64,000 bases of DNA from Macrostomum lignano. Lineage: Eukaryota. The position numbers and the translations under genes are program-made. Under the pieces are notes generated by a model. That model ran no database searches. It had not been told where the DNA came from and saw only the letters and a program-made list of their open reading frames with translations. Shown one piece after another: positions 1,069 to 64,000 of the stretch (the stretch's first letter is position 1; the number at the start of each line of letters is the position of its first letter). The DNA lies in the NCBI GenBank assembly GCA_002269645.1, contig NIVC01000810.1:62001-126000 (forward strand). The letters run 5' to 3'.

Positions 1069-1873
1069 GTAAGCAAGCATTATTTTTAAGGCCTATAAAA
1101 GGGAACGGCGTCACAAATCTCACGTCCTGCACAGACTTATATGTGCATTTGAAAATATTAAATGAAAAAAAGATTTTTTTTCTCATTTTCTTATTTATAC
1201 TCTGTTTCTCTTTATTTTACTGTATTTCAACAGCAGGTGCATGTGCATGCTAGTATGCTACCTGTACCAGATTCTTATTCAATGAATAAGTCTTATTCAT
1301 TGAATAATATACAATGCAATGTAAAATATAAAAGTAATTTTATTGGTAAATTTCTAAACTTATAAAAATGCTTTTCATTTTATAATTTTTGTGTTATCAT
1401 ACTACATAATATGAAGTCAAATTGTCATGCTACAAGACAAATTAAACTATTGGATGGGAATTATTCTTGACTATTTAATCCCTTTGCCTATCAAGCTCTA
1501 AATCGCATAGTTTGTTTAAATTAAATGGTGTATGTTGAAAAACATCACCCTATGATTTATTAATGTTAGGTCAAGTATATATTTATCAATATTTAAACTT
1601 CTATATATTGTATTAACTGTTAGGTACAAAAATAAATATAAAATACTATCCGCATGGTTTAATTATTTATGTTGATATTTTAATCAGTGTATAACTAGTA
1701 AAATTTAAAAATATGTTTACTTTTATACTTTTTACTTTAACTTTAACTTTACTTTATACTAAAAAGTAAAAAAAAGTTTTATTCAAAAAAATTAATCATC
1801 AGAAATAGTACTATATTTTAGTCTGGCCTATTAACTTTCCAGTTTCTACTCCCTCATCAGTGCTGAATTTAAA

Positions 1874-10799: not shown

Positions 10800-11165
10800 G
10801 GAACTACCTTTAATACATGTCTCATCCCTATTTTGTTTCAGTTAGAGACAATGGGTCCATGTGCACCCTGGTGCACTTTAAGCGACATTGTCACACAACC
10901 GGCGAGAGGCACTGCTGCCCATTCCGCCGACTCCCCTGAGCAGGCACACAAGCGCGCGGATACGTACGCAGTCATACGCACAGGCACACACTCACACAGG
11001 AGTGCACAGCGGCCCTAACTTTATTTATCGTTAGGTATATACACTTCGTTACGCGTTAATTGCACTAGCAGAGCCAAGCCCAGATTCCAATTTAGCCCTA
11101 AATTAATGTGACTGCACTTGGAATCGAGCCTGGGCCGCTGGCGCATCAGAGCTGGGCTACGGTCG
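10800..11165 (-). mobile_element. tRNA-derived SINE, family B (copy 1)
   Basis: Clearly homologous to 48545-48930. The minus-strand head has A-box (TAGCCCAG) and B-box-like (GGCTCGATTCC) Pol III motifs. Confidence 0.7.
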
Positions 11166-11305
11166 CTCTTGTTACATCCCTTTTGCCTGGAGCATTTGGA
11201 AAGATGAATCGCGGTTTCTTCAAATACAATAATTTTCTAAGGATCCTCTTATTCTTCTCAAGGAGGCTGCTCGTTCCTTGGAACTTAACCAACCAGTCTA
11301 TACAG

Positions 11306-17568
<6,263 letters not shown>

Positions 17569-36151: not shown

Positions 36152-39100
36152 TACTCAGCAACATTGAAAAGTTTCCACCCTAGCGCGCGAAGGGTCAACG
36201 TTGCGAAGGGTCAACGTTTTGGTGGGTGCAGATATTCATGGTTTGAGCCATAGACAAATATATAATCCGGATTCGAACGAAGCAAAGGAACAGCACAGAA
36301 ACAAAGTACGCGAGCATGGGTGACAACTTGCCCAGAACAGGGTCAGTAACGCGTATAGCAGCCACGTGCATGCAGCAGAGCGCTCACTCTCCGGGGCATC
36401 CCCAGAAACAGGCGTCGCAGAGTTGTTGCCATGCAGTAGACAGTGATTCGCGCAGTTGGGCAACGTTTTGCGGCGGATTGTCGCGCCGAATCGAGCGCTT
36501 CAGGTAATCCCAAACGTGCTCCCTGGGATTCATGTCCGGTGATCGGGATGGCCAGCGCAAAAATCGCAGGTGCAGCAGCTCCTTCAGATGCGCCACAGCG
36601 GCTGCGCGATGCGGTGGGGCGTTGTCGTCTTGGAGGACGCTGTTCCCCACGCCACCACATGAAGCATCAATGAAAGGCAGCAGGCGCGTCTGTAGAAGGT
36701 TGGCGTACGACTCGGCAGTCACAGTCGCATCCAGGAACACGAGCTCCGTCTTCGCGTGCATTGTGATGCCTGCCCACACGTGAATAGAAGCTGACTGGCT
36801 CTCAGAGTTTTGCACGTACTGCGGCAGCATCTCCTGGTGCGGCTGGCGCCACACGCGAATGCGGCCGTCGGCACGGAACAATCGAAAGCGGCTCTCATCA
36901 TGAAGAGTTTAAGAGTGGTGATCAGTCACTCAAAAACTCCCACTTCTAGACACTGGGGAACAAGTGCCTAGGTATTTACCAGTTCAAATGACTTACTGCG
37001 GCGGATCCTCTTGTGGTTGGTAGACTTCTGGTTCTTGCGGTGTGTGTGACTCTGTCTAACTTGGCTGAGCAGTAGTGACGGCCGATTTGGAGTATTTTTC
37101 TTGAGTCCTTGACTTTTATCTGTGGGTCGACCAAACGAGAGCGAATCAGAACTTCTTAACGGTCCTCGAGCTCGGAATTAACAATAGAACGTGCGCCCTA
37201 ATGAACAATTGAATTCTCTAATTTTCTGTGATAGGTCCTCCTGAAGGGCGGCTTCTTCGTTACGTCCGAAACGTAACGGATAACTCAATTAAATCAATAA
37301 ATCCTCTAGGAATATCCTAGGAAACAAGGAGGCCTTTCTCTAATGTATCGACAATGAACTGCTCTCGTATAACTCAATTAACCAACTTATTAGCGCTAGT
37401 AACAAATAACTAAATCGGGTAAACGCTTACCAATTGGACAGGTGTGGTCCCTCAGAGATTGGTCTTCTTGTTTCTTCAGAGTCTTCTTAGAGATTGCTCC
37501 GAGTCTGAATTTTTGACTCGAATTTTGACTTATATTTATAGCAAAATTTTGGAGAAAAACCGGTTTGGGATTGGGTATTTACTTAGGTCAAAAATGTTTG
37601 ATTAAGCGGTCATGCATGTTTGAGCATTACCTGAGTTAAACAAATACAGCTGTTGAAATCCGGTTCCTTGATCAAACAATGTAGGTTTCTAAATCATTCT
37701 GTTTGCGCGTGATTCCTAAAATAGATATGACTCCTTTTGAAAGAAATTGACTTCCTTAGAATATTACTTTAAGTAGAGTAGTACATGGTCTAATAACTCT
37801 CTGCAATATGATACAACCACAGAGTCTCAGGCGCCTCTCTGGGCTTGGGCTGCACCGCTGACCAAACCCGGAGCGCCGGAATCAGTGACTTTCATAGCTT
37901 TGATTCAGATCTTAATTTAAAATGAGTTTGTACTACTCAACTGACGAGTAGTTTATCGTTAAACTATATCGAAACCAGCAGTCGTGCACTTTCGGGATAA
38001 TAAAAAATGAACGAAAAGCAATAGGGGATTTGCTTGAAACGTCTATTAACCAGATTTGTTAATAAGAATTTATTTGTTTGGAATATCTCAGCCAGTCAGC
38101 GAGCACTGATGTCTTCTCGTCTCTGATGAAGAATCCAGCTCGAAGCTCTATTGGAGGATCATTCTTTTCTCGTACTTGGCGACCGGCCTGATTTCGGGGG
38201 TGGTGGTTGGCTCTGGCATCCTGTTGGTGTCCCGGTCCAGCAGTTTCTGCAGAACAGCCAGCAGCTTCTGCAGATTGGGCTTCTCTTTTTGGTTCTTGTG
38301 ATCCCGGTTTTTTAAAATGAACGGCGTGACGGTCGAAACGTCTGGAATCAGATCGATTGAGAGTTCAGGGAGTTCGTTGAAGCTGAGCATTCCACGGGAT
38401 CGGGTCTCTCTCTCCTCTACTGAATTGGAGCCTATCCTGCCTATATCCAGTTTCTATCCTGCCTATATCCAGTTTCTATCTAGCCTATATCCTTTTTAGA
38501 GACCGCTCTGAGTCTGAATTTTTGACTCAAATTTCACTTATATTTATAGCAAAATTTTGGAGAAAAACCGGTTTGGGATTGGGTATTTACTTAGGTCAAA
38601 AATGTTTGATTAAGCTGTCATGCATGTTTGAGCATTACCATATATGGGGTTAAGCAAATACAGCTGTTGGAATCCGGTTCCTTGATCAAATAATGTAGGT
38701 TTCTAAATCATTCTGTTTGCGCGTGATTCCTAAAATAGATATGACTCATTTTGAAAGAAATTGACTTCCTTAGAATATTACTTTAAGTAGAGCATTACGG
38801 TATGGTCTAATAACTCTACAATCAGTAAAAATCACTCGCCGCCACTGCTGCTGCCCTTTGCATTTCCCATTGTTTAGCAATTTGACGATCATTATTCCCA
38901 TTTTTAATGCAGAACAATCCATTGCTACAAACAATGCATTGTTTTTAGGATCGTCAAACAGAAAAACAATGCAAAGAATCAGCGGTCGCGGTCAATAGTG
39001 TTGATTATTTATCCATTGTTCCCGGCTGGCCACATGGGTTGGGGTCAGGCGTGGCCGTTTGCGCATCTTACGGGATCGCAGCATGGGTCTGCTCCATGTG

Positions 39101-40092: not shown

Positions 40093-43000
40093 ATGGATCT
40101 GCAATTGAAGCTGTTTTTGTGCTTTGCTGTCTATTGCTTCAGAAACTGTGAGGAAAATTGTTTTATTTCTGATATTGTATAATTATATCATAATTATTGC
40201 GCAATGGCATCTTGATAGAAAATAATGTAATAACCATTTATTTGACAGTTCAATTACCGGCACAGTTTCAAACCCACTGTTGAAACTTGCTACGCTAAGA
40301 GTAGGGGGTCGTACTACGAGCGTATAAAGCTTTCGTAGCGTAAGTTCGATCTTATGTCGGAACTTTTACACTGCGGAGATTGGAGTTGAGAACGGTCTTA
40401 TCTTACAATGGCTTTATAGAATTAGTAGGATGTGAATGTTACACCTTGATAAAGCGTCACTTTATCAGTGGTAGTTCTTATTGCAACTTTAACTCACATG
40501 GAACTTCATACTCATATCAAGAGTGTTAGAGTGGTGGAAGTTCAAGCTACAAGCTACATAAACCAAAAGAAACTGTAAATAATCATATCATGCATGTTAA
40601 AAAAATGTGAATGTCAAATGTCATTAGAAATCTAGTGATCTTCTAAATTACAAAAACAAGTCTCATACAATTAAGACTATCATGATTGAGTGTTCGGCTA
40701 CTGGAACATTGCGTCTTTTACAGACTCCAAAAGAGCACCAACTTGAAGTTCAATGAAGTAGTGCTAGTAACTACAATGATGCTCGCTCAGATTAAGATAG
40801 ATTACCCGTTTAAGTAGTAATCTAGATGTATAAATGCTTGAGGGTTAAATAATAAGCGCTTCTTTGGAAAGCAAACGATGGGCCTTGAATTATTGATAAA
40901 AATCTGAAGGCACTACGCCACTTTACAAAAAGCTTTGGTCAGACAGTTTTCAAGTCGCTAAAACTTTATTAACACTGAAGGCCTCGGCTTCAACATCACC
41001 AAATCCGAAATCGATGATGCCTGGCAGTCGTCATGGTACAACAGCAACGGCTGCTTCCGCAATTCATCTGCCAGACCATCGCAATGGGACTATTTTCACT
41101 CCAGCAACACCGCGGACCCCTCAGGCTACCAGTGGCTGTTGCTGAAGCTCAACCGGTGTGTCTCAGTGCTCTCCGTCACTATCTATGGGAGACTTGATTG
41201 TAAGTATTAGGACATTTTGCATCGGTTTCTGTTAGCTAAAGTTCGCTAAAGAGTACTGCTAAAATTTGTGCACACCGTGTGTTTGTGCACACCGCGTGTT
41301 TGTGCACACCGTGTGTTTGTGCACACCGTGTGTTTGTGCATACCGTGTGTTTGTGCACACCGTGTGTTTGTGCACACCGCGTGTTTGTGCACACCGTGTG
41401 TTTGTGCACACCGTGTGTTTGTGCACACCGTGTGTTTGTGCACACCGTGTGTTTGTGCACACCGTGTGTTTGTGCACACCGCGTGTTTCTGCACACCGTG
41501 TGTTTGTGCACACTGTGTTTTTGTGCATAAGAATGTATGATAATAATCAGTGCACAGTTTTCCTTGCACATTATCAAACCAGCCCCAGTCCCAGAAAGAG
41601 TCAGAGCCCTGGGCATCGAGGTGCTGCTCAGCCACGAGAGGCCAGCTGGTCTGACTGAGAATCCGCCCGGCTGCAAGGCGGGTTTCAACCACAGCCTGAC
41701 CGAATTTCACCTGTGTGGAATCACCGAGAACTCAACTAACTCAGAATTAGCATATAAAGTTACCTGCTTAGTTCGAGACTATTCAAAGGTATGCAATTGC
41801 TGAGTCCTTCAATATTGGAGCTCCCGTGCATGTTTTAATGTCCTCATTGACATCTCATTACAGTTGCCGCAGTTTGTGCTGCTGAGGAAGTTTGTTCACA
41901 ACAATGCTGACAAATACATGAACTTCCGGCTGCTGCAGATCGAGGAAAATAGCTTGGCTATTAAAAGAAGCAATGATTCTGATCGAGACGCCAATGATGC
42001 CCTGTGCTACGGAGCGTACTTTTGCAAACAAAGTAGCGTTGGATGTTTTGAGAGAGAATTGTTAACACTGAAGGAAAATGATAAACTGATGGTTAAGGCA
42101 TGGCTTCCGTGCAGCTCATCATCCGCACCTGGTGCAGTCAACTGCAGCATCCGGATGCGAAGCGGTGACGTCATGGCTCTGAGCAGTGTGAGAGCTGACT
42201 GGAAACAAAATGCTGAAATTCATTAGCTACTAACTAACAACTTGAATCCTATAAATTTTGCAGAAGACAAAACCTTCCAGTTTCATCATTTTGAAAGAGA
42301 TTAACGTGACAAAGGAATTTCACGAAGCGAATCTGCAGTGCCGACAGAGCTGCACTGACGGAAGTCTCGCGCAGACTTCGCAAGAACTGATGATAAACCA
42401 ATGTGTAGCAAAGGGTGAGCTTGAAAGAGTTTTGAGACGGTTTCCAAACACCTGCTTCGCCATTGTAACATTACTTAATGGCAATTTCGGTGAAGCTGTG
42501 ATTGAGTAAATAAATTTCAGTATCTCATGTTTTTCTCGCGCTGTATCTTTCAATAAATGAACTGCCGATTATGTAGAACTGTATCATCAATCCTTCTCAT
42601 TTCCAGTTGGTCATTTACCAACTTTAACGTGAAATTGAAGTCACCATTTCTTTTTTCTTTTTCTAAGCTTTCAGCTTGAATTTCAGGAGCTCCAAGTCTT
42701 GATCTGAGCATCACCAAGCACTGGGTGGTGAACAGGACAGCAGTGTTCTCTCTCAGCACGGATGGCTTGGTTTCTGCGACAGAGTACGACTGCTATCTTA
42801 CATATGATCCGAGAAATTATGGCAGTACATCAAGACGAAAAAAGTCGAAAACGATCTCAATAAAAAGACTGAATTCGACTTTCAGTGTAAGAATAAAAGC
42901 GCTCTGTCTATATTTGCGTGTCAATATGGTTGAGCATTCACATTTTCAGTAAACTTTTCTGCATGCTTTTAGAGTGAAACACAGAAGTTCAGTACTAAAA

Positions 43001-46000
43001 ATATCGGTGCAAAGTCGTACTTTGAGGTGAAACTGCAATCAGAATATAAGAATGGAAACATATCTTGCAGCATAAAATGCAGTGACAGCACAAATATAGC
43101 ACCAGTAACACTGCGCCTGCCTAAGCTACTCGGTGAGTTCTCACAGCTGGCTCTCACCGCAGCAATCGCCTTAGCACTCCCGACTCGAACCGTTTCAGAG
43201 GCCTGCAGCACTCGGTTTCTGCTTCCCCCAGACTCCAGCTGGATAGATGGAGCGACTGTCAATCTGACAGCTGACTCATCTCAAGGAAACTGGGTGACAA
43301 CCAGTCATAGCTGCTTTCTGCTGTCGGAGGGAGTCCCGAACTCGACACTGCGGATTGTCTCGGTGAGTATTTTACAGTTTTGCCGCCGAGACCTGCAGAA
43401 AGCATGGTGTGAAATGAACTCATTCCAGAGCACAAACTTGAGCAGCACATTCTCAGTAACTGTGAGCAGACGGTGGGGCAGCAGCGCATCCGTTGCGTGT
43501 CTGGTGAATCAGTCGGGACTGATCGAGACCTGGGCCCGGCATCCGCTGCCAGCTGCTCTGTGTGAGTCACGTGATGGATAGCTGACTATCATTATTTGCA
43601 ACAGCATGTGGCTTCACATATATAGTTTTTTCAGTTGGTACACAATTTGTACACAATAGCCAACTGCATATGCAAACACTGCAGACCCCGTGCGGAGCGC
43701 CTCCATCAGGCTGGCCGCACCGCAGATCCGAGCGAATTCCCCAGCTCAAATTCTGCTGCTCGCCTCTGACCGCGGCAATCCTCCGGCTCTGCACAGCTGC
43801 TCTGCTTCCGGAAGGAATCTCACACAGATTATGGTAAGGCTGTAGTTTTCAATATTCGACTGACAGGTGATACTTAACAATAACCTCATCCCCTAAACTG
43901 ATTGCAGCCTCCATCTGCATCAAATGCTTCATCGCTATGGACACTGAACGCTCTGGCCGGAGACAAGGACAACGGACAGCAAATTCAGTGTGATCTCTTG
44001 CAGATGACTGAAAGCAGCACAGTTTTGTTCAACAAGTCAGTAGTCAGTGACAAACTCGATGTGCTCTGTGAGTTCGGGTCGTTTTTGTTTCCCATTGTCA
44101 TGATTCTGAGTGGATGGAACGCAATTCAAATGAATTGATTTGTACAACAGATGCGTCAAGGAACTCATGGAATGCAACTCAGCCTCTGGTGACGAAGGGG
44201 GGCGAGCCCGTGTCAGTCTCAGTTCGGTCAGTCGGTGGCAACCCTGAGCCCAGTCACCGGTGCTGGCTGCGGACAGCTCAGGGTGTGAATATAAGCATGA
44301 GCAGCACTGATGGAACTCAGTCGGATCAGACAGGCAGCAGAGCGAAGAGCACCAACTTCAGCGCGAACTCCACGAGGCGGATGGACGGAGCGGCTTTGCT
44401 GTGCCGGGTGTTTCAGCAGAATTTCACTGATCTGGCTGGAGATTTCCAGCAAAATGTGACCGTTTATTGTGAGCTGCACTTTATGCATGCTGTATGTGTA
44501 CATAGCTCATGGTGCTTCAGCTAGACACATTTCTCGGATAGCAAATGCTGCATTGGTTGGTGAAGCAGAGCAAGCAATGTGGAATGAATTTCAATGTGAA
44601 AACGACATTTTCTTCAATTCAGACAAATATTTGTATTTGCAAGCCACTAATCTATTAGTAATGTATGTAATTACTATATAGAATTATGCTCATCTGAGAA
44701 AGGTTAAGCTGAATATGCTCTCATGCTCTTGGCTTGACGATTGTCCTTGAGATTGTATTGTGAGCCACAATTTAAAAATGAAATCAGGCTGGATTTCATG
44801 TGTACATAGCTTAGATGTGTACACAGCTTATGGTACTTCAGCTAGACATATTTCTGATAGGAAATGATGCATTGATTGGTTTAGCAGAGCAAGTAATGCC
44901 GAATGAATTTCAAAATGAAATCGACATTCGCTTCAATACAGATAAATGTTTTCTCATACCGGATTCTTAAGCCATTCGTCTATTAGTAATAATTACTATA
45001 TAGAAGCATACTCATCTGAAAAAGGGGGAAATGAAATTATATCATGCTCTTGGCTTGACGATTGTCAAATTGAATATAGTACACAAGGTACTTCTATCCC
45101 TTTCCACTCGCATAAATCTTGGTGTACAGTCTGTCTGTAACTTGCATGTGCATATAGACTTTGTTAAGAAAATCGTAGGTAATTGTTCCTGAAATAATTC
45201 ATCCTTATGTTCAACTCTCAGATCCCATCAGCAGCGCATCTCTCAGAGTCCCTTCAGGCGGTATTCGAAGTGGCTCAAATGTTAAAGTTGAGCTGCTGGC
45301 CTCTGATCGGGGAAATCCGCCTGCTCAGCATTTCTGTCAGCTGGATGGAAGAAGTTTGAGCAAAGAAAAGGTAATGAAATTCGAATCAGTTAACAAAAGC
45401 CCAGTCTATAATATTTAGCTCCTACTTAATAAATTTGTTTTTTTCAGGAACCATCAGAGTCGAATGCATCCTCTGTGTGGGCATTCAGTGCACAGGCCAG
45501 TGACAATGGGCTGAGAGTCGCCTGCCAAGCCGTGCAAGCTGCTGCAGACGGTCCAGCCGTGTTTAACCTGTCAGTGAGCAGCGAGCCACTCAGTGTGCTG
45601 TGTGAGTTTTCTGATCACCGAAATTACCCATTAAGCGACTGTCTGTTGATAGTTTCCAAGAAACATTGATTTCTAACTCTAAATTAAAAGATTTTTCCCT
45701 ACTAAATCAGGAAAAATTCACCGCAAAATATAGTTTTGAAAAGACTAAAACCAAGTTCGGTTCGTTTTAGTGGAGCGAAAAATCAATCACTGTACTCGTA
45801 AACTTAGTTTAGTATCCACAGAAGCATACGGGATATAAAATATTTAAATATTTATATTATATGTAATATAATATGCAACAACATTTTCTGTCATGCACAG
45901 ATCCACCGAACAACTCGTGGACTGCAACTCAGCCTCTGGTGATGAAGGAGGGCGAGCCCGTGTCAGTCTCAGTTCGGTCAGTCGGTGGCAACCCTGAGCC

Positions 46001-49000
46001 CAGTCACCGGTGCTGGCTGCGGACAGCTCAGGGTGGGAATATAAGCATGACCAGCACTGATGGAACTCATTCAGAACAGACAGGCAGCAGAGCGAAGAGC
46101 AACAACTTCAGTGCCAGCTCCACGAGGCAGATGGACGGCGGCTCAGTGGCGTGCAGCGTCTCTCAGGCGGGCCTCGAAGATCTGAGCAGCAATTTTCGGC
46201 AAAACATCACCGTTTTCTGTAAGCAAGTTTATTGTACAAATTTTCTTTTGAGTTTTGTAATTTCAAGTGGAAACTAGAACAACAACGTTAGTTCATTAGT
46301 TTTATTTACAGTCGATTAGAAAGTCTGATCTCTAAAACATAAATGCTGCATTTTCTTGGTCCCGAGTTCGAACTAGCTTCAGACTAGCTCAATTCACTTT
46401 TCTCAATTTGTCCAATTCATTTTACGTTAGCATCACAGTCTTTAGATAAACAGGTGGGAAAGATGGGTAGAAAGAAGATTCTTTGAGTTTAGTGTCTATC
46501 CTGACATGCTGCAGGTATTCGATGAACAGCAAATTTGTAGGAAGCATCCGAAGCAATGCGCTTCAAAGAGTGTCACATTAAATAGGGTACAGTAACTGAA
46601 TTTCTGCTCCAATATTTGAATATTCATATACATATTTTTCTTTCTATAACGACAAACATCCATCAATATTCTGGATTTTAAAAGCATGACAGAACCAGCT
46701 TGAAATAAACCTTCATTTCAGTCCAACCGAAAATTACTGAGATACTCAACCTGAACTCAATCATGCATGAGGACTTCCACGAGAACTTCACAATCAAGTC
46801 GACCAAGGGAAATCCGAGAGTTAATCACAGCTGTTTAGTCAATGGAAAAATAATTGTGAGGCCTCGTACGATCGGGAAGTTTTATTCATTGTAGCGTAGC
46901 TAAACCGTGTGAAGTTGAGCAAAACTCTCCAATTTCAGACAATAACTAATCAAATCAGTAATTCGAATAGATCCGAGACCCGCATGACTTTCACGCCTCA
47001 TAGAAGTCACAGCGAACTTTTGTGCTCAGCTCTGCAGTTGAGCAGCAACTCAGAAGTTGTCTTTAATGCTACTGTCTACAGGAATTTTACAGTTTACTGT
47101 AAGTGTCGAATATTTAACCTCATACGTTAAAAATCTTGAACAGGCCTCAATCCTGCTGGTTAAAAATCGCAGACAAGGCCAACAACTCACAGTTTAACAG
47201 TCTGAACTCCAACAACGTGACAGAAGGCAGCGAGTTGAACGTCACGCTGGTGTCAGTTGGAGGCAGACCGCCCGTCAGAAGTTTTAGCTGCTGGGTTGGA
47301 GAGGACCAACTCAGTGAAGTGAGTGCAGTGAGCTTTCGAGTACAGCCACATCGGTTATTGATTTCATAACATTACATGATTACAGATCAGACCGGCATCA
47401 AATACTTCTTCGATGAAAGAAACATCAAAGAGGCATCTCACGCTTCGAGCGTCTAGAAGGCACCACAACAAGAGCCTCTGTTGCAAGTTTGAGCAGGACG
47501 AAGTTCTGACTGAATGGAATAACAAAAGCTTGGTTATTTTTTGTAAGTATTTTGTTTCCTAATGTAAACTGGGAAAGCAGGATATGCATCATCCAGAATT
47601 CTGTACTTTCAGACGAGCCCTTCGTAAATCTGTCCGACAAAAGCTTTAACGGAACCAGTTTTTCTGCAATGCTGAACATCTCCGATGGCAATCCGAGTCC
47701 CGAGACTCGGTGCTTTGCGGACGGAGTTCAGCTGGTCAGTCAGCCGCAACAAATTTAGTCATATCTTCTAATTACGAGCTATTGCAACTGTCTCATGCTC
47801 GTTGTAGAATGACACGGCGTCAGCTCTTCTGACAGGCCAGGCCACTCACAGCTTGACTCACCTGCTCGAGGCTCACAACGATCAAATCAACATTTCCTGC
47901 GTGATTTCGCAACAAGGAAAAGTGAATTTCTCCAAGACCCATTATTGGGTTCTCAACTCGACAGATGATGCTCCGAGTGAGTATTGCTTCGAATGCTGTG
48001 AAATCTATTAATAACTATGAATTTGAGCATCCAATTCTTTTTGTCTTGGATCTAAAGCTTTCGAGCTTAATTAAAGCCTAATTAAAGTTTGCACGCCAAT
48101 AATAAAAAAGCAAAGTATTGATCGAAAGAAGCAAATGCATCGTAGAAGTAGTAGCTTGTGAATCTTTTTCGATAGATTTAGCGATAAACTCAAAAAATAA
48201 TTTCTTAAATACTTATAACAGATAATTAACTATGCTTTGCACTAAAATGTCACGGTCTGGGCTATTTTAAATTCTAGCTAAACTGCCAATCATCCGAGGC
48301 AATGGAAACAAAAATCTGCTATTTCTGCTGCTATTGCTGCTTCTGCTGTTGCTGCTTCTAGTGGCCGTGCCAGTTCTGCTGCGTCGCCGTCGCGGGGTCA
48401 CCCTGGGAGAGCCGTCGGGCAAGCAGGTCAATGACTTATATCGCCGCACGTCGTTGGAACTGGAGCAGGACTTCATGCGGTCGCACTACCTGTACAAGGT
48501 TGGATTCAGAGAAATTTGTTGTGTACGAGCTAAAGCGTTAGACAGAAGTTCCAACTTAGGCATGTAGTCACCAGTTGTGGCAACATCTAAACTACCCTGG
48601 CGCACTTTAAGCGACATTTTCACACAACCGGCGAGAGGCATTACTGCCCATTCAGCCGACTCCCCTGAGCAAAGGCACACAAGCGCGCGGATACGTACGC
48701 AGTCATACGCACAGGCACACACTCACACAGGAGTGAATGAGCGGCCCTAACTTTATTTACACTATGTACACTTCACTGTGCCTTGGAGGTTGGCCCTCAA
48801 GGATGTTAATTGCACGAGCAGAGCCAAGCCGAGATTTCAATTTAGCCCCAAATTAATGCGACTGCACTAGGAATCGAGCCTGGGCCGCTGGCACATCAGA
48901 GCGCCACACTGGACCACTGGGCTACGCCCCCGCATGCGGGATTGGATAAGTCTATGGTCAAACCACGCGATATAGGGCAGGATTGATTATGTCAATAGGT

Positions 49001-49278
49001 TAGCCTCATCAGACTCAGGCTCTCGCAAGGCATTTTCCTAATACAAGTAATTTTCCGTAGCAAAAATCCAAGTATTTTTTCCGGTTATATTTTACACTGT
49101 TGCACGATACCGAGTTGCTCTCTGCACCCATTCGCTCTGCCATTTGTAGAATCTACTGAACAACACCGAATATGCCACGGTGATCGGGTCGGGCACTGAC
49201 CCGTCGGACAGCCTGGAGACTCTGTACCTGCACATCGTTGGTCACATGGACGACGATGGGAATATGGTGTTCGCTTGA
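40093..49278 (+). CDS. G3: lectin-like + ~9 Ig-like domain type I membrane receptor with long Tyr-motif tail
   Basis: Signal exon 40093-40147 (MDLQLKLFLCFAVYCFRN, phase 1). Lectin-like exon 40981-41199. Further exons from ~41589 to ~47977. TM exon 48278-48498 (NLLFLLLLLLLLLLLLVAVPVLLRRRR). Last exon 49150-49278 (NLLNNTEYATVIGSGTDPSDSLETLYLHIVGHMDDDGNMVFA*). The donor at 48499 (GTTGGA) is weak. Confidence 0.85.
41265..41527. repeat. 17-bp minisatellite, ~15 units, equivalent intron of G3
   Basis: Reverse complement of the 33246-34085 unit at the homologous position. Confidence 0.97.
48545..48930 (-). mobile_element. tRNA-derived SINE, family B (copy 2) in the G3 intron between the TM and tail exons
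   Basis: Minus-strand head GGGGGCGTAGCCCAGTGGTCCAGTG...GGCTCGATTCCTAG; homologous to 10800-11165. Confidence 0.75.
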
Positions 49279-49290
49279 GAGACGCCTTTG

Positions 49291-50785
49291 TATTGGAGAA
49301 TTGTATTGGGGGAATTGTATTGGGGGAATTGTATTGGGGAATTGTATTGGGGGAATTGTATTGGGGGAATTGTATTGGGGAATTGTATTGGGGGAATTGT
49401 ATTGGGGGAATTGTATTGGGGAATTGTATTGGGGGAATTGTATTGGGGGAATTGTATTTTGGGAATCGTACTGGTGAATTTTATTGGGGAATTGTATGGA
49501 GGAATTGTACTGGGAAATTGTATTGAGGAATTGAATTTGAGGGAATTGTATTGGAGGAATTGTACTGGGAAATTGTATTGAGGAATTGAATTTGAGGGAA
49601 TTGTATTGGAGGAATTGTACTGGGAAATTGTATTGAGGAATTGAATTTGAGGGAATTGTATTGGGGGAATTGTACTGGGAAATTGTATTGAGGAATTGAA
49701 TTTGAGGGAATTGTATTGGGGGAATTGTATTGAGGAATTGAATTTGAGAAAATTGTATTGGGGGAATTGTACTGGGAAATTGTATTGAGGAATTGAATTT
49801 GAGGGAATTGTATTGGTAGCGATGCTCGTTTAATAAGTAATAGAAAAATGAAGCTTAACACCAACATAAAAGTTTTATTGAATTGTATTGGGGGAATTGT
49901 ATTGGGGGAATTGTATTGGGGGAATTTTATTGGGGGAATTGTATTGGGGGAATTGTATTGGGGGAATTGTATTGGGGGAATTGTATTGGGGGAATTGTAT
50001 TGGGGGAATTGTACTGGGAAATTGTATTGAGGAATTGAATTTGAGGGAATTGTATTGGGGGAATTGTACTGGGAAATTGTATTGAGGAATTGAATTTGAG
50101 GGAATTGTATTGGGGGAATTGTATTGAGGAATTGAATTTGAGGGAATTGTATTGGGGGAATTGTACTGGGAAATTGTATTGAGGAATTGAATTTGAGGGA
50201 ATTGTATTGGTAGCGATGCTCGTTTAATAAGTAATAGAAAAATGAAGCTTAACACCAACATAAAAGTTTTATTGAATTGTATTGGGGGAATTGTATTGGG
50301 GGAATTGTATTGGGGGAATTGTATTGGGGGAATTGTATTGGGGGAATTGTATTGGGGAATTGTATTGGGGGAATTGTATTGGGGGAATTGTATTGGGGGA
50401 ATTGTATTGGGGAATTGTATTGGGGGAATTGTATTGGGGGAATTGTATTGGGGGAATTGTATTGGGGGAATTGTATTGGGGGAATTGTATTGGGGAATTG
50501 TATTGGGGGAATTGTATTGGGGGAATTGTATTGGGGGAATTGTATTGGGGGAATTGTATTGGGGGAATTGTATTGGGGGAATTGTATTGGGGAATTGTAT
50601 TGGGGGAATTGTATTGGGGGAATTGTATTGGGGAATTGTATTGGGGAATTGTATTGGGGGAATTGTATTGGGGGAATTGTATTGGGGGAATTGTATTGGG
50701 GGAATTGTATTGGGGAATTGTACTGGTGAATTGTATTGGGGGAATTGTATTGGGGGAATTGTATTGAGAGAATCGTATTGGAAGA
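49291..50785. repeat. G-rich 14-15-bp satellite (GGGGGAATTGTATT)n with a duplicated ~65-bp unique spacer
   Basis: Tandem units. The spacer GGTAGCGATGCTC...AAAAGTTTTATTG occurs at ~49815 and ~50209. Confidence 0.95.
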
Positions 50786-51685
50786 ATTGTCTGTAGAATT
50801 CAAAATTTTCTAATCTTCCTTATTGACACTGTTACAACACACCAAAGCATATGCGCTTGTACCCACAGGTATTAACTGCAATGGCCTTTAAATAGGGTCA
50901 ACATAAAACTTTCTACTTTATGCTACTCTGCAACTCCAGTATCTCCAGTTGTATCCAAGCATTTTCCAAGCAATTTCAGCTCAAACTTGAGCTCTGAACT
51001 GCATGACTAAAGACTCATCTCAATGCGGATGCATGATTCAAATAATAGACCCAAACATTTATGAACCACAATGTTTATATTGTACTCCAGCAAGATTCCC
51101 CTAAAGGGTATGCAACCGTATCTAAGCACTAACTGATACTTTTGTTAGCAAAAGCATCTATAATTCAAATTCGATATGAATTCCTGTTTATTCTGCCCGA
51201 CTGTGGTTTCAAGTCTTGGCGACTTTTGTGAATGTTTATGCATTAATATTTGCTTCTAAATATGGAATCATCATTGCGTTTTAGTCACCTGTTTCGTTTA
51301 GAAACTCCAAAGACCTGTGCTCTCCAATCCTGTAAACTATCCGATTCCAGTAACTTTTGACAGTTACTAATTTTAGCATTGCTATCTAATTGAAGAGAGA
51401 ATGTTTGCTTGTCTGAGACAAACATACCAGAGGCATATCACAGTTCAGCATCTTATTCCAGATAATATATAACTTTTTCTTTACATAGAAGACTTTATAA
51501 CTTCGCTTCCGGCAGAGATTGTGGTTGTGGAACTTCTAAGCTAAAACTGACTTTTAAATTCAAAATTACCTGAATGTTCAGGCTAATTTGCAAATTGTGT
51601 ACGAACTAAAGAGAATGGATGGCAGAATGCAGGGAAAGATATTGGGTTTTAGAGTTATTCAACTTTACACCACATGCCTGTCTGA

Positions 51686-55600: not shown

Positions 55601-56542
55601 TGTTAGTTGCCTTGGAGTCGATATACTCGAAGTTGGATTTTAAAAATCTAATGCGGAACCAGGTTACCAGTTAAATCTGATGTGGATGTTTAAAAATTAT
55701 TGATTTAAAACTAATGTGACCTCATAGAGGAGCTTTTCATTGTCTGAAATTCTTCAACAGTCCCTCCAGAGAGCATCGACATCTCAGGCCAGCTGCTCAA
55801 TGGTTTTGACTTGAATCTGACTGTGCTTGTGGAGGAGGGAAACCCGAGGCCGGAGCTGCAGTGTCTGCTGAGATCCGAGACTGTCGGAACAATGCAACTA
55901 GTGGTACGGTTGGTGTTTTTACGTCTTCTTTAGACAGTTGATTCACACCTTCAATTCAACTTTGATTGACAGCTGCTGACAGAAGTGGATCTGCGGGGCA
56001 TCTGCGGTGGTTGGATTCGGAGAGCTCGAGTGTTCCACCGGTTCAGCGAGCAGCAGGCAGAGACTGCGGTCACGTGCCGCACCAACCAGGCCCGAACTGG
56101 CTTCAAAGATCCCAAGTTTTTGACGGAGAACTCGAAAACTTTTCAAGCCCTGTTCAGTGAGCAAGTCTTTGTGTACTTTTGAAACAGCGGGTCCTAATAA
56201 GTGCACAAAGTGATGCTAAAAGTACATGTACTTTTCTCTGTAGCAAACTGCGAGCTCCTCAAGCCCAGAGGGGTTAATAAAACTGCTGTAATTTGCTGTT
56301 CGCTGGCTGCAGTTTCTGCTGTCTCAGCTGTGGTGGTTTTTGCCTTGCTGAAGCGGCTGCCAGCAACGGGCCGTCGAAGCAAAGCCTCTGCAGTGGAGCT
56401 GGCGGCTGCCACAGCGCTTAGGGCCGCTGACCCGAACGTAAGCTTTGCGAAATCAGTTTACCGAAACTCTTAGAACTGATGTGTTCCTTATTACCAGACT
56501 TTCTCTGTAATCAAGGAACAATCACTTCTAGCACTTAGCTAG
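52622..56542 (+). CDS. G4: lectin-like receptor with only 2 of the repeated Ig-like domains and a short Tyr-free tail
   Basis: Signal exon 52622-52670 (MNYCLIILAILCCFWT, phase 1). Lectin exon 53258-53482. Exons ~53564-53772, ~53839-54139, ~54175-54362, 55137-~55300, ~55370-55527, ~55761-55903, ~55975-56172. TM exon (TAVICCSLAAVSAVSAVVVFALLKR...AADPN, GTAAGC donor). Probable last exon 56498-56542 (TFSVIKEQSLLALS*). Confidence 0.8.
54831..55154 (+). repeat. 34-bp VNTR (AGCCCTGCACCACTCACTACTCAAACCCTTCCAG)n spanning a 3' splice site of G4
   Basis: Nine CCCTTCCAG acceptors at 34-nt spacing (54864...55136). Confidence 0.95.
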
Positions 56543-61329: not shown

Positions 61330-61533
61330 GTTTGTCAAGTGTTGTACTCTGCGCCCCCCCCTTCTTGGCACGTTGATTTTAACTCCTATGTACATTGCAT
61401 CGCAGATGTACACTTACTCTAGAGCAATCGATTACAGAGCTTTGAGCTCAAATATATAATCGTGCCCTACGCCCAATTCGGGGCCGTATACGTTTGGTTC
61501 AGCTTAACTTCTGTCTCTCGCGTCAGTCACTAC

Positions 61534-62300
61534 ACTGGCATCGCAAGTTAAGCTATGTCTACTGAAACAGTGGCCAGACAGGCACGGTCGTTCAACTGCA
61601 ACTGCCTCCTCCAAAGCCATTCAACGTCAACCAAGAAGCACACGCACTGTCATCACGGTGGGAAGATTGGTCATCGCGCTTTCTGTGCTTCATCCAAGCT
61701 TTCGGAGTCAAGGATCCGGCCCAGCAGACACAAGTCCTGCTGTACACAAGCGGGAGGGAGCTGGCCGAACTATACAAGCAGCTGACCAACAGCGGAAACA
61801 CCGTCGAAGAACTTATATCAAAGTGTTCAAAGACCACTTCACAGGCCGCAGGTGCGTGGTGTTCTCAAGATATGAGTTCCGAAACTGCATGCAGCAACCA
61901 GGCCAGAGCATCGACGCATGGGTCAGTCAGCTATACAAGGCCGCAGAAAGCTGCGACTTCGACAATTTGCGCGACTCCCTCATCCGCGACCAGGTTGTCG
62001 CCGGATGCAACTTCGAGCAACTCAGACGACGGCTACTGCAGACCGCCAACATCAGCTTGCAGGATGCACTGCAGCTGTGCCGATCCTTCAAAGCCGCGAG
62101 CTACCAGTCAGCGGCCATGGAGTCACGCCGCGACGAGACAGTCAACTCGATGAGGCGCACCAGAGGTGAGCAACAAGACGGACCATCCTACTAGCCTGCC
62201 AGCAAGTCCAAGTGCTACCGTTACCGTTGCCGTTACCGTGAAACCAGGCACCGCAGCTGCGACGCGGCAAAAGGCAAAACATGCAACATCTGTGTGATAG
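61534..62300 (+). mobile_element. Ty3/gypsy LTR retrotransposon gag remnant (frameshifted)
   Basis: LTR-like end ...CAGTCACTACA followed by PBS-like TGGCATCG. Gag motifs LPPPKPF...RWEDW...F, and SRYEFRNCMQQPGQSIDAWVSQLYKAAESCDF...LIRDQVVAG...LSLQDAL-like. Confidence 0.8.
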
Positions 62301-63281
62301 ATACAATAAATGTATATAGCATGCACGATAAGCAATTCTTTAGGCCCTAGATAAACCTACTTGAAGCGTTCGGAGATTTTAAAGCTATTGGCCCTAATTG
62401 CCTATCGCCGGTCGGCGAGTCCTACCCGTCTTTCTCCAATAGCCGCAGGTACAGTACAAGAAAAGAAAGAACACGAGGGAACACGAACCGAATAGATTTG
62501 GAGAGTGATAATCCTAGTTCAAGACTGACTAAACTTGATTGACGGTTTAATTAGATTTAATAAAGTTACAAGATTCAATGCGATTCGCGGTGCAGATGAT
62601 TCGAACTGATGATAATAACGATACAACGATTAATAATAAATTAATAACGCAACTGGCAAATGGATCTCAGCGGAAGAGGAAGAAGAAAACCCGAACACGA
62701 CCACGGAGAAGACTCCTAACCCCTGGCCTAAACCAGAACCTACACTCAACGAGAGCCCTGCCGAATTGACCGTTCAACGGAGCACTGACTAAATTCTATC
62801 AGTACTGCCCTTCAGTGTGACACCGAGGCCCTCAGGATCGAGGCCACGTGCTTGGTCAAATCCGACAGTCTCTATCTAACCGCGCTTGATAGCGACGACT
62901 TCAGACAGGAATCTGCCGTAGATGTTACGCTACAAGACTGAAGCGGTCGGGCGGGGACAAAAAATGGACCGGTGATGAACTCAAGCGCCTCAAAGCGCGA
63001 ACCAAAACAATCGGGCAAGCGGCCGGGAAGCTGGACAAAACCAAGAACCGGGGAAAGAAGGCGAGATCCGATTGCCAAACACACTTTCATATATAGTTAT
63101 TGTCAGACCCTCAAAACCCCCCTCAAGCCGGGTGGTGGTCGTCTGGCCGGCCGCCCGCTAAGCTGATTTGCATTGTGCCCGCGGCGTCGGGTAGACTTGG
63201 ATTTTGCCGCGTGCCAGGGTCCAGGCCGGTTCTTGCTTGCATCGACGTTTGCAGCTCGGCGGCGTCCTTCCTCACCAAGCA

Positions 63282-64000
63282 GAGAGTCGGAAAAAGGCGA
63301 TCCTCCTGCATCTGCTTGGTGAGGAAGGACGCCGCCGAGCTGCAAACGTCGATGCAAGCAAGTCGCTTCAGGAGACCAAAACGGCACTGAAGGCGATTTT
63401 CAGCTCGTCGAGAAGCGTCATAGCAGAGCGCTTCGCCTTTCGGCAGCGAGCCCAGCACGACGGCGAGAGCATCGGAGACTACGTGATGGCCCTGAGAGAA
63501 CTGGCAACAAACTGCAAATTTGGCACCTTTCACGACGAAATAATTCGAGACCAACTTGTGGAGAAAACCTGCGTACCTCGCATTAGGGAAAGACTCCTGA
63601 TGGAGGAGGACGATCTGACGCTAGATGACGCCATCAAGAAGGCTGAGCGAATCGAAGCAGCCATCAGAGATGCCAAGCAGGTCAGCGGCCCAGAGCTCCA
63701 CGTGAAGGCGCTGAGCAAGAAGCCGAAGCCAGCTGCTCGCCATGAGAAGACCGCAGCAGCAGGTCCAAAGTGCACTCGATGCGGAGGCAACCACGGACAC
63801 AAGGGCGAATGCAAGGCGATGGGCCAGAAATGCAGACGATGCGGCAAGACGAACCATTTCGCGAAAATGTGCCGCATGAACGCGGTCTCTGCGATCGACA
63901 CCAAAGAGCCTGCAGAGTCCAGTCTGACGGTCCTGGCCGTGAACAACAAGAGCACAGACAGCTTATTCTGCGAATGCCGTCTGGGCGGACAGCTGATTCG
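63282..64000 (+). mobile_element. Second Ty3/gypsy gag (5'-truncated, open to window end) with zinc knuckle
   Basis: Frame KKAILLHLLGEEG...ERFAFRQRAQHDGESIGDYVMALRELATNCKFG...IIRDQLV...CRRCGKTNHFAKMC (CX2CX4HX4C). It has no ATG, so it is missing from the ORF track. Confidence 0.85.

What the first reader, a model, noticed from the sequence alone, without database searches (positions are those of the whole stretch)
49150..49278. Two ITSM-type motifs (TEYATV, TLYLHI) in the G3 cytoplasmic tail
Seen: the terminal exon joins in phase 0 and encodes NNTEYATV (49165-49182) and ETLYLHI (49219-49236), both matching TxYxxV/I; a YKNL spans the junction. The tails of G1, G2 and G4 lack these motifs. Knowledge: TxYxxV/I is the ITSM consensus and the PD-1 ITSM is TEYATI; such motifs recruit SHP-1/2-type SH2 proteins. 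Inference: G3 is the inhibitory or switch member of the family. Six-residue motifs can arise by chance, but two in a 42-aa exon is notable.
Basis: partly seen in the sequence, partly recalled or inferred. Interest (0 to 1): 0.75.

Follow-up and report, generated by a model that had tools for sequence, protein, structure and literature searches.

The report
Flatworm Ig receptor with PD-1-like tail
A gene in a cluster of flatworm (Macrostomum) cell-surface receptors probably ends in a short tail with two tyrosine motifs like those on vertebrate inhibitory immune receptors such as PD-1, and distant relatives of the gene carry the same motif, but whether this last exon is spliced in is unproven.

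Summary
Bases 49150-49275 read in frame as NLLNNTEYATVIGSGTDPSDSLETLYLHIVGHMDDDGNMVFA, followed by a stop. This contains two TxYxx[V/I] motifs, and it is the only place in all six frames of the window with two of them within 42 residues.

The exon looks coding. Codon-usage log-likelihood ratio (LLR) is +13.9 bits in frame against about -14.5 in the other two frames, GC3 is 0.74, and it has a good acceptor. It is by far the best terminal-exon candidate after the G3 transmembrane (TM) exon.

The window comes from a Macrostomum flatworm. G1-G5 belong to a lineage-restricted family with a divergent discoidin/F-lectin-like N-terminal domain, many C2-like Ig domains and a TM segment.

The new evidence is that two distant M. 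lignano paralogue groups also end in TEYxx[I/V]. One has VVYAQV...TEYTEI. The other has YINS...TEYLDI on a small phase-0 terminal exon. By chance this would happen about 8e-7 of the time.

Caveats:
- The G3 donor (AAG|GTTGGA) scores far below all 25 family donors.
- No homologue of the tail exists in the databases searched.
- The terminal exons of G1, G2 and G4 were not found.
- "Inhibitory/switch" is inferred, not shown.

Verdict: a real, probably functional phosphotyrosine docking tail.

The parts
46722..47976 (+). Last six ectodomain exons of G3 (46722-46855, 46939-47098, 47173-47318, 47386-47542, 47613-47734, 47808-47976). They encode three C2-like Ig domains, each split into two half-domain exons.
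   Evidence: Open frames and splice sites were read. The phases run 1-0-1-0-1-0-1 without a break. There is paralogue conservation with G1 and G2 and a weak Pfam C2-set_2 match.
48278..48498 (+). G3 transmembrane and juxtamembrane exon. It holds a poly-Leu TM helix (48316-48381), the RRRR stop-transfer signal, and a cytoplasmic stretch ending ...DLYRRTSLELEQDFMRSHYLYK.
   Evidence: The acceptor is ttctag|CT in phase 1, matching the donor at 47976. Codon LLR is +10.8 bits. There is no paralogue in the window and no database hit.
48499..49149 (+). Proposed last intron (651 nt). Its donor GTTGGA is weak. If the intron is retained, the frame reads VGFREICCVRAKALDRSSNLGM and then a stop at 48565.
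   Evidence: The donor scores -1.6 against 5.5 to 11.2 for 25 family donors. The read-through codons have LLR -3.7 and GC3 0.32. The intron contains an interspersed repeat at 48594-48930.
48594..48930 (.). SINE-like interspersed repeat inside the intron.
   Evidence: There is an 85% identical copy at 10865-11152 and a 77% identical copy in M. lignano contig L002 at 23557-23878. ARAGORN and Rfam find no tRNA there.
49150..49278 (+). Proposed terminal coding exon of G3: 42 codons plus TGA.
   Evidence: The acceptor is ctctgccatttgtag|AAT. Codon LLR is +13.9 bits in frame against -14.8 and -14.4 in the other frames, and GC3 is 0.74. It is the best of all acceptor-preceded ORFs in the 4.7 kb after the TM exon; the next best scores 4.4.
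48493..48498 (+). First half (Y, K) of the YKNL motif, a pYxN Grb2/Drk-type site. The second half (N, L) is 49150-49155. The motif exists only if the donor at 48498 is used.
   Evidence: A YxN motif (YINS) also precedes the TEY motif in paralogue P0025.
49165..49182 (+). TEYATV, ITSM-type motif 1. Five of its six residues match PD-1's TEYATI.
   Evidence: PD-1's motif is taken from PMC5149523.
49219..49236 (+). TLYLHI, ITSM-type motif 2. Its tyrosine lies 18 residues after the first one.
49288..50790 (.). A 14-nt minisatellite (about 108 copies) that starts 10 nt after the stop codon and would lie in the 3' UTR.
   Evidence: No AATAAA occurs before 53107.
40980..42187 (+). G3 N-terminal discoidin/F-lectin-like domain exons (40980-41199, 41583-41788, 41864-42187), which define the gene family.
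   Evidence: The profile search hits Macrostomum paralogues first and then F5/8-type-C proteins.

Best explanation
G3 (about 40,980-49,278, + strand) is one of five tandem or inverted paralogues in this window. They belong to a Macrostomum (flatworm) receptor family. Each member has a divergent discoidin/F-lectin-like N-terminal domain, a cysteine-rich module, about ten C2-like Ig domains encoded as half-domain exons, one TM helix and a short tail.

The last coding exon of G3 (49150-49278) is most likely real. It is joined in phase 0 to the TM exon and gives an 81-residue, probably disordered cytoplasmic tail. That tail carries YKNL, TEYATV and TLYLHI.

Inferred mechanism: after ligand engagement, a Src-family kinase phosphorylates these tyrosines. 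The two TxYxx[V/I] sites have the -2 Thr, small +1 residue and +3 Val/Ile that the SH2 domains of SHP-type phosphatases prefer. They would dock the tandem SH2 domains of the flatworm Csw/SHP orthologue, and pYKNL could dock Grb2/Drk.

TEYxx[I/V] is a family-wide short linear motif kept inside otherwise unalignable tails.

The very weak donor of the last intron suggests that inclusion of the motif exon is optional. Intron retention would give a motif-less isoform ending 22 residues after the junction.

Shown: the sequence, the frame, the coding signature, the rarity of the motif, and its recurrence in paralogues.
Inferred: splicing, phosphorylation, the binding partner, and the sign of the signal.
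For: - The sequence and frame are as described.
- Two TxYxx[VI] motifs within 42 residues occur nowhere else in the window; P is 3.6e-5 per stretch.
- Codon LLR is +13.9 bits in frame against -14.8 and -14.4, and GC3 is 0.74. The read-through codons score -3.7 with GC3 0.32.
- The exon is the clear outlier among candidate terminal exons after the G3 TM exon: 13.9 against a next best of 4.4. Nothing above 4.0 exists after the G1, G2 or G4 TM exons.
- Exon phases are unbroken from 46722 to the stop.
- A profile of the N-terminal exon finds only Macrostomum lignano proteins at the top, with E from 1e-24 to 5e-11.
- The full-length paralogue PAA49974.1 (P0009) ends ...PDVVYAQV-x21-TEYTEIVKSNA. That is an ITIM plus an ITSM 27 residues apart, all in one exon together with its TM segment.
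- PAA92527.1 (P0025) ends ...EFYINSKLFR|SRRLNGDVTEYLDIV..., with the TEY motif on a 24-codon phase-0 terminal exon. This is the same layout as in G3.
- The chance that both independent tails carry TEYxx[VI] is 8e-7, or 3e-4 for the looser TxYxx[VI].
- The tails are otherwise unalignable, as expected for a selected short linear motif.
- PD-1's ITSM is TEYATI (PMC5149523).
- Shp2/Csw and Grb2 are conserved down to cnidarians (PMC7260276).
Against: - The donor AAG|GTTGGA scores -1.6. All 25 donors of this family, in the window and in M. lignano loci, are GTRAG-like (one is GTCAGT) and score 5.5 to 11.2. No GT in or just after the TM exon scores above 1.8.
- There is no transcript evidence.
- Neither the tail nor the TM exon has a homologue in 5.8 billion protein clusters, in the window or in metagenome contigs.
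- The G3 TM exon is unrelated to the G2 and G4 TM exons.
- No canonical polyadenylation signal follows the stop for 3.8 kb.
- The Tyr-Tyr spacing of 18 is shorter than the 23-27 typical of ITIM/ITSM pairs, and the second motif has Leu at +1.
- I could not check whether a Csw/SHP orthologue or a SAP-like adaptor exists in Macrostomum.
Confidence: 0.55

Rival explanations
1. The 49150 ORF is not part of mature G3 mRNA. The TM exon is the last coding exon and reads through to the TAG at 48565, giving a motif-less tail. The downstream ORF is then a recently orphaned exon (donor decayed) or a chance ORF.
For: The donor scores -1.6 against 5.5 to 11.2 for 25 family donors, and there is no consensus donor anywhere in the TM exon. 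The tail has no homologue anywhere. A SINE-like element has been inserted in the supposed intron.
Against: The coding signature is strongly frame-specific and the exon is the top-ranked candidate. The read-through codons look non-coding. The acceptor is good and the phase matches. The motif matches the family's C-terminal TEYxx[I/V] hallmark, which a chance ORF would not do. A recently orphaned exon would still show all of these features, so that version cannot be excluded.
Confidence: 0.2
2. The exon is used, but the tyrosines act as YxxPhi sorting signals (YKNL, YATV, YLHI). These would bind the mu subunit of AP-2 or AP-1 when unphosphorylated and control endocytosis or lysosomal targeting of the receptor, rather than serving as SH2 docking sites.
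For: All three motifs fit Yxx[LIVMF]. This rests on established knowledge of tyrosine-based sorting signals. CTLA-4's YVKM shows that one motif can serve both roles.
Against: What is conserved in the family includes the -2 Thr and -1 Glu (TEY) in three unalignable tails. AP binding does not need these positions, whereas SHP-type SH2 domains and acidophilic tyrosine kinases do use them. P0009 pairs the motif with a textbook ITIM, VVYAQV.
Confidence: 0.1
3. The tail is a positive (activating or scaffolding) module rather than an inhibitory one. In one version, pYKNL and pTEYATV recruit Drk/Grb2 and Csw/SHP-2 to drive Ras-MAPK signalling, as in receptor-tyrosine-kinase docking proteins. In another, YKNL-x5-YATV acts as an ITAM-like pair for a Syk-type kinase.
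For: YxN precedes the TEY motif in both G3 and P0025. From my own knowledge, Csw/SHP-2 is mainly a positive effector in invertebrates, and Schistosoma has a Syk kinase (SmTK4). Shp2 and Grb2 act together downstream of FGFR (PMC7260276).
Against: The YKNL-YATV spacing is x5 and the second motif ends in Val, so the ITAM rule YxxL/I-x6-8-YxxL/I is not met. YKNL exists only with one of the three possible donors. P0009 has an ITIM and no YxN.
Confidence: 0.15

Closest known systems
PD-1 (PDCD1) cytoplasmic tail: ITIM VDYGEL plus ITSM TEYATI
   Same: TEYATV matches PD-1's ITSM at five of six positions and also sits near the C-terminus of a type I Ig-superfamily receptor. The paralogue P0009 reproduces the ITIM-then-ITSM order with similar spacing: 27 residues against 25 in PD-1, the latter figure from my own knowledge.
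   Different: There is no sequence homology outside the motif. G3 has two ITSM-type motifs and no ITIM. Its ectodomain is a discoidin-like domain plus about ten C2-like Ig domains, not a single IgV domain. The organism is a flatworm. The resemblance is therefore convergent, or reflects shared SH2 specificity, and does not indicate family membership.
SIRP-alpha/SHPS-1, PZR and PECAM-1 (Ig-superfamily SHP-2 docking receptors)
   Same: From my own knowledge these carry motifs such as HTEYASI, VIYAQL/VVYADI and TVYSEV, paired 23-25 residues apart, which bind the tandem SH2 domains of SHP-2. G3's NNTEYATV and P0009's VVYAQV/TEYTEI resemble them closely.
   Different: They belong to unrelated vertebrate families. 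Binding has not been tested here. The G3 spacing is 18 residues.
SLAM-family receptors (CD150, 2B4), for which the ITSM was defined
   Same: They carry several TxYxx[V/I] motifs in one tail.
   Different: The switch function depends on the SAP and EAT-2 adaptors, which to my knowledge are known only from vertebrates. Their presence in Macrostomum was not tested. The ectodomains are unrelated.
Botryllus FcoR and Hydractinia Alr families (invertebrate Ig-superfamily multigene clusters with ITIM, hemITAM or ITAM tails)
   Same: These are lineage-restricted, fast-diverging, clustered Ig-superfamily receptor genes with tyrosine motifs in their tails. In FcoR3 and FcoR4, intron retention swaps or removes the motif exon (PMC12582321). 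That parallels what the weak last-intron donor of G3 would allow.
   Different: The phylum differs and there is no homology. The Macrostomum family has a discoidin/F-lectin-like head domain. No link to allorecognition or immunity has been shown here.
Macrostomum lignano paralogues PAA49974.1 (BOX15_Mlig012130g1) and PAA92527.1 (BOX15_Mlig026357g1)
   Same: They share the N-terminal domain (WQSS...QWDYFH...GYQWLL(I/L)KL), the Ig repeats, the TM segment and a C-terminal TEYxx[I/V] motif. PAA92527.1 also carries its motif on a small phase-0 terminal exon preceded by a YxN motif.
   Different: Identity is only about 20-25% overall. The tails are unalignable apart from the motif. The paralogues have consensus donors. 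They are annotated only as hypothetical proteins.

Membership tests
ITSM (immunoreceptor tyrosine-based switch motif) | Sequence TxYxx[V/I] | tested here: met
   TEYATV at 49165-49182 and TLYLHI at 49219-49236.
ITSM (immunoreceptor tyrosine-based switch motif) | The motif lies in the cytoplasmic tail of a transmembrane receptor | tested here: inconclusive
   The TM exon (poly-Leu helix plus RRRR) lies 651 nt upstream and is phase-compatible, and the exon has a coding signature. However, the donor is very weak and no transcript data are available.
ITSM (immunoreceptor tyrosine-based switch motif) | The phosphorylated motif binds SAP/EAT-2 and/or SHP-1, SHP-2 or SHIP through SH2 domains | not testable with these tools
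   This needs phosphopeptide binding or pull-down experiments.
ITSM (immunoreceptor tyrosine-based switch motif) | The organism encodes SAP-family adaptors that make the motif a switch | not tested
To my knowledge the SAP family is known only from vertebrates.
ITIM | Sequence [S/I/V/L]xYxx[I/V/L] | tested here: not met
   Both G3 motifs have Thr at -2, and no other G3 tail tyrosine fits the pattern. The paralogue P0009 does carry VVYAQV.
ITAM | YxxL/I-x6-8-YxxL/I | tested here: not met
   YKNL-x5-YATV is one residue short and ends in Val. YATV-x14-YLHI is too far apart.
PD-1/CD28 receptor family | A single IgV ectodomain and detectable sequence homology | tested here: not met
   The ectodomain is a discoidin-like domain plus many C2-like Ig domains. 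No homologues were found for the C-terminal half or the tail.
Macrostomum discoidin-like/Ig receptor family (undescribed) | N-terminal domain with the WQSS...QW.YFH...DPSGYQWLLLKL...YGR signature | tested here: met
   G2, G3, G4 and G5 align at 49-97% identity. The profile retrieves M. lignano proteins at E from 1e-24 to 5e-11, and then F5/8-type-C proteins.
Macrostomum discoidin-like/Ig receptor family (undescribed) | Repeated C2-like Ig domains containing GGNPxPSHxCW | tested here: met
   Paralogue tblastn, weak Pfam C2-set_2 and Ig_3 matches, and the same motif in P0007, P0008, P0011 and P0018.
Macrostomum discoidin-like/Ig receptor family (undescribed) | C-terminal TEYxx[I/V] motif after a single TM segment | tested here: met
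   It is present in G3, in the P0009 group and in the P0025 group, which are all three tails available. It is unknown for G1, G2 and G4.

The most novel reading that the evidence does not exclude
Flatworms of the genus Macrostomum have evolved their own clustered, rapidly duplicating family of lectin-headed Ig receptors. These signal through PD-1/SIRP-like ITIM/ITSM tails, which would make the family a platyhelminth counterpart of KIR/LILR, Hydractinia Alr or Botryllus FcoR. The system could serve self/non-self, mate or gamete recognition. In G3 the weak last-intron donor would let splicing switch the receptor between a signalling-competent form and a tail-less form.
Probability: 0.2. Interest if true: 0.8.

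Novelty: new variant of a known kind. Interest (0 to 1): 0.55.

Why it matters
ITIM/ITSM-type signalling tails on clustered, fast-evolving Ig-superfamily receptors are known from vertebrates and, more recently, from Hydractinia and Botryllus. I found no report for Platyhelminthes in the searched literature.

If the tail is used, it would be another independent case of unrelated receptor families converging on the same SH2-docking code. It would come from an animal that to my knowledge supports RNAi, transgenesis and regeneration studies, so the function could be tested directly.

It would also give an annotation to a family that is now only "hypothetical protein" in M. lignano, and define its domain layout: a discoidin/F-lectin-like head, Ig repeats and a TEY tail.

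Tried and rejected
- **Database searches for the tail.** Searches with the G3 C-terminal half and with the tail alone found nothing. Exact look-up of two window ORFs found nothing. A metagenome scan for the exon DNA found nothing.
- **Concatenated query.** I used a profile of the single N-terminal exon instead, and that identified the family.
- **Shared tail exons among paralogues.** tblastx between the regions downstream of the four TM exons found no shared cytoplasmic exon.
- **Terminal exons of G1, G2 and G4.** A scan by acceptor plus codon score, and a scan by acidic-Tyr motif, both found nothing.
- **Orthologous cluster in M. lignano.** P0021 and P0018, the closest relatives of G2/G3 and G4, are not on record with genomic context. 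The orthologous cluster could therefore not be inspected.
- **Structure prediction.** AlphaFold2 on P0025 with a 12-sequence alignment gave mean pLDDT 45, too poor for a fold search, so none was run.
- **Domain assignment.** Pfam does not recognise the N-terminal domain. Calling it discoidin/F-lectin-like rests on the profile's lower hits being F5/8-type-C proteins.
- **tRNA-like stretch in the intron.** ARAGORN and Rfam find no tRNA or RNA family there. It is an interspersed repeat.
- **Insect origin.** All were rejected once the Macrostomum hits appeared.
- **Literature.** Searches for flatworm ITIM/ITSM receptors found nothing relevant.

Full report
**What is in the sequence.** The stretch 49150-49275 is an open frame of 42 codons. 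It reads NLLNNTEYATVIGSGTDPSDSLETLYLHIVGHMDDDGNMVFA and is followed by TGA. The ORF is preceded by a good acceptor (ctctgccatttgtag|AAT).

Upstream by 651 bases lies an exon at 48278-48498. It encodes KLPIIRGNGNKN, a 22-residue poly-Leu hydrophobic segment, RRRR, and then GVTLGEPSGKQVNDLYRRTSLELEQDFMRSHYLYK. I traced the six exons before it (46722-47976). Their phases run 1-0-1-0-1-0-1 and lead correctly into this TM exon, which ends in phase 0. Joining 48498 to 49150 is therefore in frame, and YKNL spans the junction.

**Is it more than chance?** TxYxx[VI] occurs at 2.3e-4 per stop-free hexamer in the six-frame translation of the window. The probability of two or more in a given 42-residue stretch is 3.6e-5. 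This is the only one of 703 open segments of at least 42 residues with two motifs that close together. No other TxYxx[VI] lies in a plausible coding context downstream of the other paralogues' TM exons.

**Is the exon real?** I trained a codon table on 2,880 codons. These came from paralogue-conserved exons and from the RhoGEF gene at the left end of the window.
- The exon scores +13.9 bits in its frame against -14.8 and -14.4 in the other two frames. At 0.33 bits per codon it is above the training mean of 0.24, and its GC3 is 0.74.
- It ranks 9th of 541 stop-terminated 42-codon windows. At least four of the eight that rank above it are other genuine exons.
- Among all acceptor-preceded ORFs in the 4.7 kb after the TM exon it stands alone, at 13.9 against a next best of 4.4.
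- The 22 codons that would be read if the intron were retained score -3.7 with GC3 0.32.
- The intron holds an interspersed SINE-like repeat (48594-48930). That repeat is also found at 10860-11153 and, at 77% identity, in a Macrostomum lignano contig.

Against this stands the donor. I built a matrix from 25 donors of this family, taken from the window and from two M. lignano loci. All are GTRAG-like except one GTCAGT, and they score 5.5 to 11.2. On that matrix AAG|GTTGGA scores -1.6. All three join in frame, but only 48498 creates YKNL. Splicing is therefore plausible yet clearly sub-optimal. It may be inefficient or regulated, or the exon may have been orphaned recently.

**What the gene is.** The window holds five related genes:
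- G1, about 11.3-17.6 kb, + strand
- G2, 34.4 to 23.3 kb, - strand
- G3, 40.98-49.28 kb, + strand
- G4, 53.26-56.47 kb and beyond, + strand
- G5, a partial copy at 60.83-61.34 kb next to retroelement ORFs

The 5' halves of G2 and G3 are a head-to-head inverted duplication at 94-97% identity. The exons encode three parts. The first is an N-terminal domain with an invariant DPSGYQWLLLKL...YGR core. The second is a cysteine-rich module. The third is a long series of C2-like Ig domains carrying GGNPxPSHxCW (weak Pfam C2-set_2 match).

Word-indexed protein searches with the G3 C-terminal half and with the tail found nothing. A full HMMER search of 1.84 billion representatives, using a profile of the N-terminal exon, found 15 proteins. 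The best six, and ten of the fifteen, are Macrostomum lignano proteins (E from 1.3e-24 to 5e-11 for the top six). Lower hits (P0014, P0016, P0019) are multi-domain proteins that Pfam assigns to F5/8 type C and NedA-like galactose-binding domains.

P0011 and P0018 are 77-94% identical to exons of G4 and G5, and P0006 and P0021 are about 70% identical to G2 and G3. The window therefore comes from M. lignano or a very close relative. The family is a lineage-restricted receptor family with a lectin-like head and Ig repeats, and its members are annotated only as hypothetical or "Ig-like domain-containing" proteins. Pfam itself does not recognise the head domain. An AlphaFold2 model of a small member was too poor to use, with pLDDT 45.

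**The decisive new evidence.** Only two paralogue groups in the database have complete tails, and both carry the motif.
- PAA49974.1 and its near-identical copies (P0009, P0022, P0024; 804 aa) end ...ATVPDVVYAQVLKVSGDAWQQEEVNKSAASLATEYTEIVKSNA. This is a canonical ITIM (VVYAQV) followed 27 residues later by an ITSM (TEYTEI). It is encoded in one exon together with the TM segment, so no splicing assumption is needed.
- PAA92527.1 (P0025; also P0026) ends ...DEFYINSKLFR|SRRLNGDVTEYLDIVSIGVVRQPK. The TEYLDI motif sits on a 24-codon terminal exon, reached through a phase-0 intron with a consensus donor (CGG|gtgagt) and acceptor. This is the same layout as proposed for G3, including a YxN motif just before the junction.
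- A sister copy, P0017, lacks the motif exon.

These proteins are only about 20-25% identical to one another overall, and their tails cannot be aligned with the G3 tail. With the family's own amino-acid frequencies, the chance that both independent tails contain TEYxx[VI] is 8e-7. For the looser TxYxx[VI] it is 3e-4. TEYxx[I/V] is therefore a maintained short linear motif of this family. This supports both the reality of the G3 exon and a function for the tyrosine.

**How it most likely works.** What follows is inference from established SH2 biology. The motif has Thr at -2, Glu at -1, a small residue at +1 and Val or Ile at +3. This is the pattern preferred by the SH2 domains of SHP-type phosphatases, and it is shared by PD-1 (TEYATI; PMC5149523), SIRP-alpha, BTLA and PECAM-1 (my own knowledge). 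Two such sites 18 residues apart could engage a tandem-SH2 phosphatase. YKNL is a Grb2/Drk-type pYxN site. Shp2/Csw and Grb2 are conserved across eumetazoans (PMC7260276), but I could not check Macrostomum itself.

Whether the outcome is inhibitory is open. SAP-type adaptors, which make an ITSM a "switch", are to my knowledge vertebrate-specific, and Csw/SHP-2 is mostly a positive relay in invertebrates. The motifs also fit YxxPhi sorting signals, although conservation of T and E upstream of the Tyr argues for kinase and SH2 recognition. YKNL-x5-YATV falls one residue short of ITAM spacing.

**The other paralogues.** The TM exons of G2 and G4 are homologous to each other and end at consensus donors in equivalent places (DPS|gtgagt and DPN|gtaagc). 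They must therefore continue into cytoplasmic exons, but none could be located. The G3 TM exon and tail are unrelated to those of its neighbours, even though its 5' half is a recent copy of G2. G3 thus has a different 3' end, whose origin is unknown.

**Comparison and novelty.** The closest functional analogues are vertebrate ITIM/ITSM receptors and the invertebrate Alr (Hydractinia) and FcoR (Botryllus) families. In FcoR, intron retention adds or removes motif exons (PMC12582321). There is no homology to any of them, and G3 does not meet the ITIM or ITAM definitions. It does meet the sequence definition of an ITSM, while the biochemical definition is untestable here. I found no literature on such receptors in flatworms. 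I rate this a new variant of a known kind and moderately interesting. The main open point is transcript evidence for the last splice.

Noticed in passing
window 40853-44395 (+) vs 34497-26825 (-): The 5' halves of G2 and G3 are a head-to-head inverted duplication at 94-97% identity. Each carries the same 17-nt minisatellite in the intron after the first domain exon (33245-34086 and 41265-41527). G2 has about 3.6 kb extra between 32274 and 28653. The 3' halves of the two genes differ.
   Followed up: partly
window 23265-23549 (-) and 56201-56470 (+): The G2 and G4 TM exons are homologous and end at consensus donors (DPS|gtgagt and DPN|gtaagc). Both genes should therefore have further cytoplasmic exons, but none could be found by conservation, codon score or motif.
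   Followed up: yes
L002 15508-15966 (M. lignano NIVC01003746.1; PAA49974.1): A distant paralogue has a textbook ITIM (VVYAQV) followed 27 residues later by an ITSM (TEYTEI) in its last exon. Three near-identical gene copies exist in the M. lignano assembly, and two of the three keep this tail (the third, P0023, is a truncated 676-aa copy without it).
   Followed up: yes
L001 11967-12128 (M. lignano NIVC01000049.1; PAA92527.1): A 24-codon phase-0 terminal exon carries TEYLDI, preceded by YINS. The sister gene PAA53557.1 is annotated without this exon (...KLFRKA). This suggests optional or variable use of the motif exon in the family.
   Followed up: partly
window 47613-47734: This G3 Ig half-domain exon appears to use the donor CTG|GTCAGT, with C at +3. 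It is the only other non-GTR donor in the gene.
   Followed up: partly
window 48594-48930 and 10860-11153: A SINE-like interspersed repeat with a tRNA-like stretch, which ARAGORN and Rfam do not call. A 77% identical copy lies in M. lignano contig L002 at 23557-23878.
   Followed up: partly
window 49288-50790: A 14-nt minisatellite (TTGTATTGGGGGAA, about 108 copies) begins 10 nt after the G3 stop codon. No AATAAA occurs before 53107.
   Followed up: partly
window 15721-16207: A (TAC)162 microsatellite lies in G1 directly after an Ig-domain exon. It is open in frame as poly-Thr or poly-Leu and is presumably intronic.
   Followed up: no
window 1835-9170 (+): A dynamin-binding-protein-like RhoGEF gene (Pfam RhoGEF, E 4e-21) has best database relatives at only 30-34% identity. 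Several minisatellites whose periods are multiples of three (24 nt, 12 nt) lie within or between its open frames.
   Followed up: partly
window 36387-36908 (-) and 61508-63998 (+): There is a DDE_3 (Tc1/mariner-type) transposase remnant between G2 and G3. Gag-like ORFs with a CCHC zinc knuckle lie next to the partial paralogue G5, which they may have interrupted.
   Followed up: partly
window 11289-11504: G1 seems to lack the discoidin-like N-terminal exons found in G2-G5. It starts, as far as can be detected, at the cysteine-rich module.
   Followed up: no
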